Source: Pocillopora damicornis (taxonomy: Eukaryota). From it: DNA of 64,000 nt. A model generated the notes under the pieces. That model was not told where the DNA came from, ran no database searches, and worked only from the letters and a program-made list of their open reading frames with translations. The position numbers were made by a program, and so were the translations under genes. Of this stretch, positions 3,289-16,131 are shown piece after piece (positions within the stretch are counted from its first letter, which is position 1; the number at the start of each line of letters is the position of its first letter). The stretch lies in assembly GCF_003704095.1 (NCBI RefSeq), contig NW_020843837.1, positions 248,001 to 312,000 of the forward strand, written 5' to 3'.

Positions 3289-3360
3289 CATTTTCATCTT
3301 CGAGCCACAGGGACCCACAATTTGGGCAGGCTTACCCCTGAGGCTGTCATTCGTGAAACG
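3289..3360 (-). promoter_or_regulatory. SECIS element (form II) of deiodinase A
   Basis: Minus-strand RNA: CGUUUCACGA-AUGAC-AGCCUCAGGG-GU-AA-GCCUGC(CCAAAUU)GUGGGU-CCCUGUGGCU-CGAA-GAUGAAAAUG. It has the AUGA/GA core, a 10-bp helix II with one U.U mismatch, AA 12 nt after the core and an apical mini-helix. It lies about 170 nt after the stop codon. Confidence 0.88.
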
Positions 3361-3527
3361 TTGACAGGGTCAGACGAGAAACATAGGACACAGATTACAT
3401 AAGTCATGTGACTGAACTAAAAAACCCGGTCTCGGGAGAACACGAACGTTTAAAAGTGCGACAATGTTTAAAAGTGTTTCTTTTGTTTGTTCGTTTTTTA
3501 ACAGTTAATAACCGAATTAGCAGCACT

Positions 3528-12100: not shown

Positions 12101-15100
12101 CTATATTATTTCAGCTTTGTACTCCTCCAGCCAGCGTTGCACCTCCGTCAAGTCGTAATTGTACGGACCCGTGCCCCCTTCGTAAACTATTTTGCCTTGT
12201 TGTATAATAAACAGTCTCTCGGGCCACGCGCCATACGCCATGGAAGCTTCATTCTTCATGGTGTCCACTATAACAGGGGCAGGACAACCGCTGGACTTTA
12301 AGATTTCTGCAGCAGCAAATCGGTCTTTCAAGCATTTATGCTGAGCAATTTCAACATTGTTCTAAAGATGCAAAAAAGTGTATTTTAAAACAAACTAAAA
12401 CTTTTACAAACAGAAGGCTTTGTGTGAACAATGAAATAATTAATACGGGATCGCTCTGGTTTGCTTCAACGCGCCCAGTGATTAGCTTAAAAAAATCGTG
12501 CGTTCCTCTCAACCAGTCAGGTGAAAAATAAAATCAATCGTGACTTGGCAAATCGCATGTTCCCATAGCTTCGGGCAGTTTGCTTTTTTTTCGCTTCAAG
12601 CCGTCATGCAACTAAATAACGATTCCATAATTTAAGAATCGCAGCTAAATTGAAGCAAACATCACCAAAAATAAAAGGTTATAGACATCCTGACGGAGGG
12701 GTAGCACTCTTTTAAACTTTTTTTTTGCTGTTTGCTGTTCTGAGGAGGTCTTAATACTGTTTGATAATGATAGAGAACCACAAAAAATTACAGTCTGAGG
12801 CGGCAAAATGCACTGTGGCTTACAGTCGGTAATTTGGCGGTAACTTTTGGCAAAGACAAATGTGAGGATTGAAATAAATCATGATGTGGTTTATGTGGGT
12901 AAACCAGACACGATTCTGCCACCTCTTGCATTTTAAAAATGCGATTAGTGATATTCGTTTAAGAAGGTGTTGGTGAAATTTGATCAGAGTTTTTTTTTGG
13001 CCCGTAAGTAAAAGCACTCGAGAACAAACGTTCTGTTTGACTGTTCGTTCTAAATCACCAATGTGATGTCTTCATTGATTCAATGTCAACATCTTACTAA
13101 GTCTTATTGATAGCAAGATCATCAACTTCTTGATTCTGAACATATCATGATCAAATCACTCAGTAAAAGCTTAAATATTTGTGTAACTGCTTGAGACCCC
13201 GAAGTTTGCTTATCGCAAAACAATTTGAGCAAGATGCTAGAAAACTTGGGTTTAGACCTTGATTGTTTTGAGTGAATTTTTAAAGTCAGTTCATTTTCGT
13301 ACTTCCACATAACTATTACTGTACATGGAATTTGTTTGTTTTTCTCGCATATGTTTAAATTGCAGACCAATGTTTAACGAACAATTACTAACAAAACTAC
13401 AATAAAACTAACAGTTCTGTATGCTCTTCCTATTTTTAAAGGCTTTGTTTTCGACGATGAAGTGTTTTTCGTAAGTTTCTTAACAAAAATCCCTATTTCC
13501 AAAGATCAAAAGTTCGATAAATAAATCTTCAGTCAGACAAACTGAGACATTCTGTGATGCTGAAACACCTGTTGAAAGTTATCTTAGATAACAAGAAATT
13601 TTTGGAATCTAGTTTTTAGAGGTAGACTCTGCCCTGCGCTATTATGCGTCTGCTCAAATGTCATGGTAACAGCCATAATAATAGACCAAAACAAAACCCT
13701 GAGGGATTACAGAAGACGAAGATCGCGAAAAGAACCTTGAAAAAGCCAAGAATTAACACTGGTATTTTTGACTTGGCACGTTTCCCTTGGTATCCACGAG
13801 GGAAACTTGCCAAGGATGAAAATTGTTTCTTCAAAAAGAGAGAGGGCAATGTGAAGGAAATTGTAGAGGGTTAATGAGAAATTTCTCTCAGGTTTGTCTA
13901 CATTTCTTAGCAAGCACTGATGCCAAGTTTTCCCTTCACGAGTTAACTACGAAAGGAAAAACGCACTTCCTAATGGAACTTTGCTAAGTAAATAGGGCAT
14001 TAGGTTGAAATTTCAAGATGTAAAGCGTGATATAGCTTCGGGCCAACGAGAACTAAGGAAGTCGTTAACGATGATCGAAGTGGAAAATTGTTTCTGCCGG
14101 TACCGATTGCTCTATTGTTGTGGGAAAGAGTTATGGCATCATTTTCACTGAAAGGAACCGCAAGAGAGACAATACCCTTAAAATCATTGTCTACTAAAAC
14201 TCGGAACTTAAATAACTTAAAATACACGATCCATAAGGTTTCAATTCATCTAACTCGTCTTCTGACTCAAAAAAAATCACAACCTTATACTCATTCATAT
14301 CCCACATATCAAACATTTCCACCAGCACCACGTGGTTAATCAGTCCTGGAGTTTTCCACTAATCGATCAGCTCACAATATTTCAAGGGAGAGACAAGAAG
14401 ATCAGACACCGGTTTCGCGGGTCAGTTCTGTTGAACCAATTAGTTTAGAGAATGATGCTGATTATAAAGGTATCAGTCGTTTAATACACGCATTGAAATC
14501 GTTTTGTATGACCATTTCCGCACGTAATAACGCATCCTAGTTGTTGCGTCGTGAAGACGACTCAAAAGACCAACAAGTTCCATAACAGATACTTTAAACT
14601 ACTGTTGTTCGGTTGAAGAAGGGGAGCCAAAACTGAATGGCATATGGGCCCTATAACCCAAACGACATAACTATAAATACATTATCAATAAAATTTTGTG
14701 TTACTTCCTTTTATCATCAGGAAAGTGAAAGTATTCAAATTTCATTTTGAAAACTAACAAACAGTTTGATATGAAACATATTAGTTTGCGTTTGACTCCC
14801 TTTTTCTCTCGTCTTCCTCAAGAGTAATTACGCAAAATAAATCAACTCTTCCAATTGTTTTCCTTTTATCACGAATTACGTCACTTTAATCGCATCTTGT
14901 TTGCTTGCGGGGAGCCGCTCTGACGCCAAAAATAAATGTTTGAGGTTTCAATCATACTTGCTATAAACTACCTCATTATGCGCTTATTTTGATGTTCTGC
15001 TATAAAAAAGCTAATTATGAAAAAATCCTTGCGTAAACTTGCCATGTAGGCTATCAAATTCCACACCAATACAAATAATCGTTTTTCGTGAAACAACTCC

Positions 15101-16131
15101 TCTTCAATTAACCGCAAATTTTTTGAAATGCTGGTGCACATGATCTGCCGCCGTCATGCGCCCATGAATAGCTATGCTTTCTGAAGTCTGTTTTTCGTTA
15201 CGTCAAATCGCATTTTCCTCAGAACATTGCATTTTCAAGAGTCGCTCACAGCTATGTTTAAAGTGCAGAGAGTGGAAAGCAAATTCCACCTGACCTCACG
15301 CAAGCTTCAATCGAACTTTAGAAACGGTAATCTCTATGTGTTGCTTGTTTTTAATAAACGAAAAATGTTCCGTTGATACTCAATCCTTAATGGGGGACGG
15401 CTAAGCTTTTACTTTAAGTGATAAACAGAAGCATAATGCATTTCATCCCTCCAATTGCAGGCATGGAAACGTCTTCACAATTTAGTAACAAATGATGCTT
15501 CGTAATAATTAAATTTGATATACAACAAACGATAACGCTAGATATGAATTGCAAGATTCGCTTAAATATATATTTATACAAACAAACAAACAAACAAAAC
15601 AAAAGATAGCGTAAAAACGAAAACAAAAACAGAACAACAAAATCCAAAACTTACATTCCATTTCCATCCGTCACTTGGATGTGCCTCGCTAATGTAAATA
15701 ACCTTAAAGTCCGCAACATCAGCAAAATCCCGAACGACTTTGGTGAAGTCGTTCTTGAGACGGATGAAGAACGGAGGTCAGCTGCAGCTGCCGAAGTTAA
15801 GAACCAATGGACGTTCCCCTCTGGCTAGATCTAGCAATCTGCACTCTTTTTGGTCTGTCGAAATCAGCTCACAGTCTGGCGCTGGAGAACCAAGTCGCGC
15901 TGTTTTGTTTAAGTCGCCAAGATTTAACTGCATAACTGCGCGCAACATTTTCCAGCTGCACCACGACTGCCAGAAATCTTCATAGGGCACTAGAAGGAAC
16001 TTCTCATTGTATCTTTTGATTCTGTCTTTGAGGATAGGGATCGAAGACGCTATTCGCATCAAGCCAATTGCTAAAGTGATACGAATTACCGTTAGCGGCC
16101 AAAGAACAGCATATGCTGCTGAAGAAAGCAT
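12101..16131 (-). CDS. DIO: Iodothyronine deiodinase-like selenoprotein B, 245 aa; exons 16131-15655 and 12361-12101; Sec (TGA) at 15780-15778, codon 118 (in-frame upstream ATG at 16182 also possible)
   Basis: RPLVLNFGSCS-TGA-PPF...YISEAHPSDGWKWN|NNVEIAQHKCLKDRF...AYGAWPERLFII...YEGGTGPYNY. Same intron position and phase and identical coding exon lengths (477 and 261 nt) to paralog A; GCAGCCATG start context; SECIS downstream. Confidence 0.95.
12445..12600. repeat. Dispersed repeat copy (family also at 34526 and 59070)
   Basis: Shares the ...GGTTT(T)GC...GTGATT...CTCTCAACCA(A/G)TCAG...CAATC...GACTT... order with the other two copies. Confidence 0.5.

What the first reader, a model, noticed from the sequence alone, without database searches (positions are those of the whole stretch)
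3289..16131. Tandem pair of complete selenocysteine deiodinases, each with its own SECIS, hidden by UGA
Seen: two 245-aa genes with in-frame TGA at codon 118, continued coding after it, an identical intron position and a SECIS each. Established: Sec-dependent iodothyronine deiodinases activate or inactivate thyroid hormones in vertebrates, and standard gene callers truncate or split them. Inference: in an apparent cnidarian, which has no thyroid gland, two intact and diverged paralogs suggest a maintained iodo- or halo-aromatic dehalogenation or signalling system with an unknown substrate. Their N-termini are strongly diverged while the catalytic cores are conserved.
Basis: partly seen in the sequence, partly recalled or inferred. 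Interest (0 to 1): 0.8.

Follow-up and report, generated by a model that had tools for sequence, protein, structure and literature searches.

The report
Tandem coral selenocysteine deiodinase-family genes
Two neighbouring coral genes really do encode deiodinase-family enzymes that read an in-frame UGA as selenocysteine with the help of a 3'UTR hairpin; they are conserved and expressed, but they belong to a known enzyme family and their substrate is still unknown.

Summary
Two two-exon genes lie on the minus strand: A at 3290-4977 and B at 11499-16182. All their pieces match Pfam T4_deiodinase in the right order. In each gene an in-frame TGA sits exactly where mouse Dio3 has Sec170, and the phase-0 GT-AG intron is at the same position.

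Each 3'UTR carries an AUGA..AA..GA hairpin. Rfam SECIS_1 scores them 25.3 and 20.5 bits, below the gathering score of 35. The stem covaries among coral orthologues and paralogues.

RNA contigs from four studies show the gene B splice 15655/12361, and a 3'UTR contig running through its SECIS. Spliced mRNA contigs of a 91%-identical gene A orthologue hold the TGA, the junction and the SECIS together.

No A/B-type homologue retrieved shows Cys or any other true sense codon there. dN/dS is 0.05-0.37 in the pieces downstream of it. The genome has tRNA-Sec and SepSecS.

The genome, probably Pocillopora, has nine deiodinase-like genes: four with TGA and five with Cys. The scan had already flagged another of the four (s1-771537). 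The A/B pair predates the Pocillopora-Oculina split.

The catalytic relay residues are kept. Residues that hold thyroxine's amino-acid end in Dio3 are not, so the substrate is open.

Sec deiodinase families and tandem clusters are already known in Trichoplax, molluscs and amphioxus, so this is a new member of a known kind.

The parts
4627..4977 (-). Gene A, exon 1 coding part before the UGA (117 codons, N-terminal hydrophobic anchor, ends NFGSCS)
   Evidence: PF00837 positions 11-112, E 5.7e-17; Kyte-Doolittle 19-residue maximum 2.2 at residues 9-27
4624..4626 (-). Gene A in-frame TGA, read as Sec118
   Evidence: TGA in all 10 Tara contigs; stop or code-4 'W' at this site in all A/B-type homologues
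4501..4623 (-). Gene A, exon 1 coding part after the UGA (41 codons, holds EAHPTDGW)
   Evidence: PF00837 positions 115-152, E 1.9e-10; dN/dS 0.05-0.17 against orthologues
3789..4500 (-). Gene A intron (712 nt, GT..AG, phase 0)
   Evidence: orthologue mRNA contigs L048-L051 join the same codons with no intron
3528..3788 (-). Gene A exon 2 coding part (86 codons) plus stop codon
   Evidence: PF00837 positions 157-236, E 6.6e-28
3290..3360 (-). Gene A SECIS element (AUGA at 3350-3347, GA at 3301-3300; form-2-like with AA bulge and mini-stem), about 180 nt after the stop
   Evidence: Rfam SECIS_1 25.3 bits, E 0.0025 on a 111-nt stretch; inner hairpin -20.6 kcal/mol; covariation; model R1
15781..16182 (-). 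Gene B, exon 1 coding part before the UGA (134 codons from ATG 16182; second ATG at 16131)
   Evidence: PF00837 E 1.6e-16; the N-terminal 17 residues are conserved in orthologues; RNA contigs cover it
15778..15780 (-). Gene B in-frame TGA, read as Sec135 (Sec118 from the second ATG)
   Evidence: TGA in 10 of 10 population contigs; lies inside exon-1 RNA contigs that continue to the splice joint
15655..15777 (-). Gene B, exon 1 coding part after the UGA (41 codons, EAHPSDGW)
   Evidence: PF00837 E 7e-12; aligns to Dio2 and Dio3 chains directly after Sec
12362..15654 (-). Gene B intron (3293 nt, GT..AG, phase 0)
   Evidence: Joint 12361/15655 in 4 RNA runs from 4 studies; intron contig depth about a tenth of exon depth or less
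12101..12361 (-). Gene B exon 2 coding part (86 codons) plus stop codon
   Evidence: PF00837 E 1.6e-28; aligns to Dio3 chain 103-182, E 7e-21
11499..12100 (-). Gene B 3'UTR (about 600 nt; RNA contigs end near 11499-11502)
   Evidence: Contigs X1 11400-12361, X5 11502-12361, X6 11499-12361 with adapter letters beyond 11499
11534..11599 (-). Gene B SECIS element (AUGA at 11589-11586, GA at 11545-11544), about 510 nt after the stop
   Evidence: Rfam SECIS_1 20.5 bits, full model; covariation with the Oculina and L044 orthologues; inside the RNA contigs

Best explanation
These are two functional, expressed paralogous genes of the iodothyronine-deiodinase family (thioredoxin-fold selenoenzymes) in a scleractinian coral. 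Each mRNA carries one in-frame UGA, which is recoded to selenocysteine. The recoding is directed by a form-2-like SECIS hairpin in the gene's own 3'UTR and uses the genome's tRNA-Sec and Sec-synthesis machinery. The product is an N-terminally membrane-anchored enzyme of about 245 aa (A) or 262 aa (B) with the active site S-C-S-Sec. The pair arose by an old tandem duplication that predates the Pocillopora/Oculina split, and both copies have stayed under purifying selection. By inference from the vertebrate enzymes, the selenolate attacks a halogen on an aromatic ring (reductive dehalogenation) and is regenerated through the neighbouring Cys and thiols, using the conserved Ser/Tyr/Glu/His/His proton relay. 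The natural substrate is probably an iodinated phenolic compound but not necessarily a thyronine, because the residues that hold thyroxine's amino-acid end in Dio3 are replaced. Shown here: gene structure, Sec codon, SECIS, expression and splicing, conservation. Inferred: actual Sec insertion, the chemistry and the substrate.
For: Family and Sec position: PF00837 matches all six pieces in order. The TGA aligns to Sec170 of mouse Dio3, with the pieces aligning to chain 11-56, 58-95 and 103-182.
Coding continues past the TGA: dN/dS is 0.05-0.20 for the 41 codons after it and 0.16-0.37 for exon 2 where dS could be computed.
TGA conservation: of 75 homologue clusters or members checked, 53 end at this codon. 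About 20 read 'W' there; I take that as callers reading TGA as Trp (genetic code 4), but checked no DNA for those entries. Two are fragments without the site. None has Cys or any other true sense codon. DNA of six other loci shows TGA.
SECIS: Rfam SECIS_1 is the top hit on the correct strand in both 3'UTRs, at 25.3 and 20.5 bits. RNAalifold on 11 elements predicts helix II directly between AUGA-N and N-GA, with 10 of 12 pairs showing compensatory changes. 0 of 500 shuffles reach the observed values, and slid partners drop from 88% paired to 21-58%. A covariance model finds two unseen elements about 470 nt after the stop of another species' B gene (E 1.7e-5). It finds none near the five Cys paralogues or elsewhere in 228 kb.
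Expression: the gene B splice joint appears in 4 RNA runs from 4 studies. Exon contigs are 10-40 times deeper than intron contigs in three runs and about 2-20 times in the fourth (X6). A 3'UTR contig runs through the SECIS. Spliced mRNA contigs of the A orthologue from 4 runs hold the TGA, the junction and the SECIS.
Machinery: two tRNA-Sec genes (77.8 bits, anticodon TCA) and a multi-exon SepSecS gene.
Catalytic residues kept: Ser167, Cys168, Tyr197, Glu200, His202, Trp207, His219, Glu259, Arg260 in Dio3 numbering (roles from PMC11592359 and PMC7506546).
Against: Both SECIS hits are below Rfam's gathering score of 35 bits. The whole-window gathering search found none, and a 601-nt search missed A's. 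Single-sequence folding z-scores are only about -1.6.
The SECIS set was first picked by my own pairing-based scan, so part of the pairing is selected for.
Sec insertion and enzyme activity are not shown.
The Dio3 substrate-holding residues Tyr257, Phe258, Arg275 and Asp278 are replaced by Trp, Pro, Thr and Tyr, so iodothyronine activity cannot be assumed.
Confidence: 0.85

Rival explanations
1. They are true thyroid-hormone deiodinases working as in vertebrates, converting T4, T3 or rT3 taken up from food or made by the coral, as part of thyroid-hormone-like signalling.
For: Family membership and the full catalytic relay. Coral 'dio' transcripts vary with lunar phase and temperature and rise before spawning (PMC6851572, PMC12573721). 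Iodinated compounds are reported in cnidarians (cited in PMC6851572).
Against: The Dio3 residues that hold the T4 carboxylate and line the pocket (Tyr257, Phe258, Arg275 or Dio2 Lys241, Asp278) are Trp/Phe, Pro, Thr/Asn/Met and Tyr in the coral A/B genes. Phe258Pro and Arg275Ala lower Dio3 activity (PMC7506546). Cnidarians have no thyroid hormone receptor (PMC10083991).
Confidence: 0.2
2. They are Sec-dependent thiol-redox enzymes (peroxiredoxin- or thioredoxin-like) that do not dehalogenate anything; 'deiodinase' is only a family label.
For: The DIO fold is peroxiredoxin-like (PMC11592359, PMC7506546). The thyronine-holding residues are not conserved. A coral study filed its deiodinase under oxidative stress (PMC3204972).
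Against: The deiodinase-specific insertion and its conserved edges (EAHPxDGW, His219) are fully kept. Pfam matches span the whole DIO model rather than generic AhpC/Redoxin families.
Confidence: 0.12
3. One or both are pseudogenes or truncated proteins: the TGA is a plain stop and the downstream frame and hairpins are coincidence.
For: Public gene callers stop at the TGA. The SECIS scores are below Rfam's threshold.
Against: The TGA is kept across many coral species in both lineages. There is strong purifying selection downstream. The SECIS stem covaries and occurs only with TGA-bearing paralogues. The spliced mRNAs are abundant and contain the TGA.
Confidence: 0.02

Closest known systems
Vertebrate iodothyronine deiodinases DIO1/2/3 (mouse Dio3 4TR3/4TR4, Dio2 9H48)
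   Same: PF00837 domain across the whole length. Sec at the same position in an S-C-(T/S)-U-P-P-F motif. The Ser/Tyr/Glu/His/His relay, Trp207, Glu259 and Arg260. An N-terminal hydrophobic anchor. One SECIS in the 3'UTR.
   Different: Thr169 is Ser. Tyr257, Phe258, Arg275 (Lys241 in Dio2) and Asp278 are Trp, Pro, Thr and Tyr. Arg176 is kept in B but is Asn in A. The Cys near position 239 is shifted by two residues in a gapless alignment. The organism has no thyroid and no thyroid hormone receptor.
Invertebrate Sec-deiodinase families and tandem clusters (Trichoplax 11, Lottia 4, Capitella 12, amphioxus 9 genes; Jiang et al. 2012, PMC3473315)
   Same: Multi-copy families with tandem clusters, Sec forms with SECIS, and gene models missed by standard annotation.
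   Different: That study found only Cys-form DI genes in the one cnidarian it examined, Nematostella. This coral has four Sec forms and five Cys forms, and the A/B pair is conserved across coral genera.
Cys-type deiodinase homologues (Nematostella Cys forms, PMC3473315; five paralogues in this genome)
   Same: Same family and same intron position; they share the FGS-x-T/S-[C/U]-P motif.
   Different: Cys replaces Sec, and no SECIS is found within 3 kb downstream. All five have Ile where the four Sec genes and Dio3 have Glu259.
Eukaryotic SECIS element (Rfam RF00031)
   Same: AUGA core, AA 13 nt downstream in a 5' bulge, GA on the 3' strand, a helix II of 9-10 pairs, and a 3'UTR location.
   Different: The scores of 25.3 and 20.5 bits are below the 35-bit gathering threshold.

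Membership tests
Iodothyronine deiodinase family (Pfam PF00837) | Full-length match to the family profile above the curated cut-off | tested here: met
   All six pieces score 40.9-100.1 bits (cut-off 27) and lie in order over profile positions 5-236 of 237
Iodothyronine deiodinase family (Pfam PF00837) | Catalytic Sec (UGA) or Cys at the position of Dio3 Sec170 | tested here: met
   The TGA lies between pieces that align to Dio3 chain 11-56 and 58-95
Iodothyronine deiodinase family (Pfam PF00837) | Proton-relay and loop-D edge residues (Ser167, Tyr197, Glu200, His202, Trp207, His219) | tested here: met
   All are identical in A and B in the gapless alignments; their roles are taken from PMC11592359
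Iodothyronine deiodinase family (Pfam PF00837) | Residues that hold the thyronine amino-acid end (Dio3 Arg275 or Dio2 Lys241; Tyr257) | tested here: not met
   Thr at 275 (Thr, Asn or Met in the A/B orthologues; none of the nine paralogues has Arg or Lys there) and Trp/Phe at 257
Iodothyronine deiodinase family (Pfam PF00837) | N-terminal single membrane anchor | tested here: inconclusive
   Hydropathy maxima of 2.2 (A) and 1.7 (B) in the first 45 residues; no dedicated predictor was run
Iodothyronine deiodinase family (Pfam PF00837) | Reductive deiodination of iodothyronines | not testable with these tools
   Needs an enzyme assay
Eukaryotic selenoprotein gene | SECIS element in the 3'UTR of the same transcript | tested here: met
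   B: RNA contigs run from exon 2 through 11544-11589. A: orthologue mRNA contigs hold the TGA and the SECIS. Covariation; model specificity
Eukaryotic selenoprotein gene | SECIS reaches Rfam RF00031 gathering score (35 bits) | tested here: not met
   25.3 bits (A) and 20.5 bits (B); none in the gathering search
Eukaryotic selenoprotein gene | UGA conserved, or replaced by Cys, in orthologues, with coding constraint downstream | tested here: met
Eukaryotic selenoprotein gene | Sec machinery present in the genome | tested here: met
   Two tRNA-Sec genes with anticodon TCA and SepSecS. SBP2, eEFSec, PSTK and SPS2 were not searched
Eukaryotic selenoprotein gene | Selenium actually incorporated | not testable with these tools
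   Needs 75Se labelling or mass spectrometry

The most novel reading that the evidence does not exclude
Scleractinian corals keep an ancient, syntenic module: a tandem pair of Sec-dependent deiodinase-family enzymes whose substrate pocket lacks the thyronine carboxylate clamp, lying next to an aminergic-type GPCR. This module would process a non-thyronine iodinated or brominated phenolic signal that times reproduction (lunar or spawning cues). That would be a halogen-based hormone system in an animal with no thyroid and no thyroid hormone receptor.
Probability: 0.1. Interest if true: 0.7.

Novelty: new member of a known kind. Interest (0 to 1): 0.35.

Why it matters
It corrects the annotation of two genes (four in this genome) that public gene callers truncate at the UGA or split. 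It shows that cnidarians are not limited to Cys-form deiodinases, which is what the one published cnidarian selenoproteome survey found in Nematostella. It also provides defined Sec-type enzymes, with SECIS elements and orthologue sets, for testing what 'thyroid-like' signalling in corals really acts on. Coral 'dio' transcripts already track lunar and spawning timing in published RNA-seq. Knowing that these are selenoenzymes with an altered substrate cleft tells experimenters how to express them (with a SECIS, or as Sec-to-Cys forms) and to test substrates beyond T4 and T3. The enzyme family and the recoding mechanism themselves are well known.

Tried and rejected
- Rfam at gathering threshold over the whole window gave no hit.
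- Rfam 'evalue' on 601 nt missed gene A's SECIS, apparently through the filters. It appeared only on a 111-nt stretch.
- Single-sequence folding against shuffles was not significant, z about -1.6, and +0.6 for the L046 element. Stability alone therefore says little.
- Population variation across 20 Tara/Logan contigs was uninformative. The contigs were retrieved by exact identity of the N-terminal piece, and diversity in gene A's exon 2 (3.1%) is no lower than in its intron (2.5%).
- Exact-protein look-ups return the longest contigs first, so I obtained no transcript contig of gene A from this species.
- Cluster names were almost all empty; only Oculina patagonica is named.
- P0073 (238 aa) looked like a full-length product but is an unspliced read into the intron.
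- My loose SECIS scan gives 26 hits in the window, so it is not specific on its own. One borderline hit 2.1 kb after a Cys paralogue was not supported by the covariance model.
- All searches were by exon piece and by reference. Trees were built per exon, with exon 1 read with X at the TGA. I therefore made no phylogeny with vertebrate DIO1/2/3 and no structure prediction.
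Full report
**What is there**

Both genes lie on the minus strand.

| Feature | Gene A | Gene B |
|---|---|---|
| Start codon | ATG 4977 | ATG 16182 (second ATG at 16131) |
| Codons before the TGA | 117 | 134 (117 from the second ATG) |
| In-frame TGA | 4626-4624 | 15780-15778 |
| Codons after the TGA in exon 1 | 41, ending at 4501 | 41, ending at 15655 |
| Intron | 712 nt, GT..AG | 3293 nt, GT..AG |
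| Exon 2 coding part | 3788-3531 | 12361-12104 |
| Stop codon | 3530-3528 | 12103-12101 |

The intron is phase 0 at the same codon in both genes.

All six coding pieces match Pfam T4_deiodinase above its cut-off and in the right order. The only gap in profile coverage falls where Sec belongs. Against solved structures, gene B's pieces align to mouse Dio3 (4TR3) chain residues 11-56, 58-95 and 103-182. The TGA therefore corresponds to chain residue 57, which is Sec170.

One amendment concerns gene B. The 17 residues upstream of the second ATG are conserved in B orthologues, so B more likely starts at 16182, giving 262 aa with Sec135.

**SECIS elements**

Each 3'UTR has an AUGA ... AA ... GA hairpin on the coding strand.

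- Gene A's is at 3350-3300, 180 nt after the stop.
- Gene B's is at 11589-11544, about 510 nt after the stop.

Rfam's SECIS_1 model matches both over its full length, at 20.5 bits for B and 25.3 bits for A. Both are below the 35-bit gathering score. Nothing appeared in the whole-window gathering search or, for A, in a 601-nt search. Stronger evidence comes from comparison with other sequences.

- **Other TGA and Cys paralogues.** I found equivalent hairpins downstream of the two other TGA-bearing paralogues in this genome. The five Cys paralogues gave only one borderline hit.
- **Orthologues.** I also found them downstream of A- and B-type orthologues in other corals.
- **Covariation.** On the 11-sequence alignment, RNAalifold predicts a 9-pair helix that starts one base after AUGA and ends one base before GA. 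Ten of the 12 predicted pairs show compensatory double changes. No shuffle out of 500 reaches the observed values, and sliding the partners drops pairing from 88% to 21-58%.
- **Covariance model.** A model built from this alignment found two elements it had not seen, about 470 nt after the stop of another species' B gene (E 1.7e-5). It found nothing else in 228 kb, including 3 kb downstream of every Cys paralogue and the rest of the window.

One caveat applies: the training set was first picked by a pairing-based scan of my own, so part of the pairing is selected for.

**Expression**

Reads were laid on gene B.

- In four poly(A)/cDNA runs from four studies, a contig joins 15655 to 12361. The skipped ends are CT..AC on the plus strand, which is GT..AG on the gene strand.
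- Exon contigs are 10-40 times deeper than intron contigs in three runs and about 2-20 times in the fourth (X6).
- Exon-1 contigs contain the TGA region and run into the joint.
- A 3'UTR contig runs from 12361 to 11400-11502, through the SECIS. Two runs end near 11500.

I have no reads for gene A in this species. However, four Logan contigs from four runs carry its 91%-identical orthologue as spliced mRNA. In these, the pieces abut at 704/705 with no intron. The in-frame TGA is at 579-581 and the SECIS lies about 185 nt after the stop.

**Conservation**

Gene A and gene B each have their own set of orthologues.

- **The TGA.** I checked 75 homologue clusters or members. Fifty-three end at this codon. 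About 20 read 'W' there; I take that as gene callers reading TGA as Trp under genetic code 4, though I checked no DNA for those entries. Two are fragments without the site. None has Cys or any other true sense codon. The DNA of six other loci shows TGA directly.
- **Selection.** dN/dS is 0.08-0.19 overall. It is 0.05-0.20 for the 41 codons after the TGA and 0.16-0.37 for exon 2 where dS could be computed.
- **Tandem order.** In Oculina patagonica the same B-then-A order is present. The annotated A-like protein there (KAL9989029.1, 157 aa) ends exactly at the UGA, and exon 2 is called as a separate gene. That illustrates the 'hidden by UGA' point.
- **Trees.** The exon-1 tree puts A and B together at 96/95 support, with all A orthologues nested inside at 94/93. 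The duplication therefore predates the split of these corals.
- **A rearranged case.** In one species (L044) the A-like copy is inverted.

**Genome context**

The genome is 234 Mb in 4393 contigs. Identical proteins occur in Tara Pacific coral metagenome contigs, and the RNA runs are labelled as coral metagenomes. It is probably Pocillopora; that is my inference from these sources and from my memory of the assembly size.

The genome holds nine deiodinase-like genes, all with the same intron position:

- four with TGA: A, B, one on C3129 and one on C2576 at about 182 kb;
- five with Cys.

The scan had already flagged the C2576 gene as having a SECIS about 1.9 kb downstream (s1-771537). I had found the same element independently.

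The genome also has two tRNA-Sec genes with anticodon TCA, and a SepSecS gene.

**How it likely works**

I used Dio3 numbering (chain position + 113). This offset places Glu200, His202, His219, Cys239 and Arg275 correctly, so I trust it. The roles of these residues come from PMC11592359 and PMC7506546.

- **Kept in the coral enzymes:** Ser167, Cys168, Sec170, Tyr197, Glu200, His202, Trp207, His219, Glu259 and Arg260. These are the catalytic centre, the proposed proton relay and the resolving Cys.
- **Replaced:**

| Dio3 residue | Role in Dio3 | Coral A/B residue |
|---|---|---|
| Tyr257 | with Arg275, holds the T4 carboxylate | Trp (Phe in some orthologues) |
| Phe258 | lines the substrate pocket | Pro |
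| Arg275 (Lys241 in Dio2) | with Tyr257, holds the T4 carboxylate | Thr (Asn or Met in some orthologues) |
| Asp278 | lines the substrate pocket | Tyr |

- **Different between the paralogues:** Arg176 is kept in all B-type genes but varies in A-type genes (Asn, Thr or Pro).

My reading is Sec-dependent reductive dehalogenation of a phenolic substrate whose side chain differs from thyronine's. This is inference, not a shown result.

**Comparison with what is known**

- Sec deiodinase families and tandem clusters are documented in Trichoplax, Lottia, Capitella and amphioxus. The same study reported only Cys forms in Nematostella (PMC3473315).
- Anemone deiodinase families of four to five genes are on record (PMC3909931).
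- Coral 'dio' transcripts are reported to follow lunar and temperature cues and to rise before spawning (PMC6851572, PMC12573721).
- I found no open-access paper describing the Sec forms and their SECIS elements in corals. I could not see this genome's own annotation.

I therefore rate the finding as a new member of a known kind. The annotation is solid and useful, and the surprise is modest.

All searches were by exon piece and trees were built per exon. I did not predict a structure or build a phylogeny with the vertebrate deiodinases.

Noticed in passing
window 26259-27272 (+) and 47302-48393 (-): Two intronless rhodopsin-family GPCR ORFs (PF00001, E 2e-30 and 1e-36). Orthologues of the first are named 'histamine H2 receptor-like' in Oculina, Montipora and Acropora. 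In at least four assemblies the contig-length field is the same as for a deiodinase A/B orthologue, which suggests conserved synteny. In Acropora tenuis a 'DIO3' gene (s0035.g81) sits next to a 'DRD5-like' receptor (g82), and both rise before spawning (PMC12573721).
   Followed up: partly
G000 paralogues: L013-L019 plus the window: At the Dio3 Glu259 position, all four TGA (Sec) paralogues have Pro-Glu-Arg and all five Cys paralogues have Pro-Ile-Arg. This is a clean Sec/Glu versus Cys/Ile co-variation within one genome.
   Followed up: no
L041 (Oculina patagonica CM126635.1) 10001-13227 and 21445-23227: The public annotation ends the A-like gene exactly at the UGA ('hypothetical protein', 157 aa) and calls its exon 2 as a separate gene about 9.7 kb downstream.
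   Followed up: partly
L044 10001-20110: In this unnamed coral assembly the A-like gene lies on the opposite strand, convergent with the B-like gene. Both still have the TGA and a SECIS.
   Followed up: partly
window upstream of 16300 (run X1 record 4): One 1718-nt RNA contig that contains gene B's exon 1 extends more than 1 kb beyond 16300. This could be a longer 5'UTR, an upstream transcript or read-through. A TATA-like motif sits at about 16228-16221.
   Followed up: no
Homologues P0005-P0073: About 20 database proteins show Trp at the Sec position. I take this to mean metagenome gene callers switched to a TGA=Trp code on these coral contigs. It is a recurring annotation artefact that could serve as a flag for eukaryotic selenoprotein genes.
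   Followed up: no
window 34990-36507 (-) and 61940-62443 (-): A 505-aa ORF with no Pfam match lies in a stretch with strongly negative GC and AT skew (34-36 kb). A separate 167-aa ORF has a calcium-binding EGF domain.
   Followed up: no
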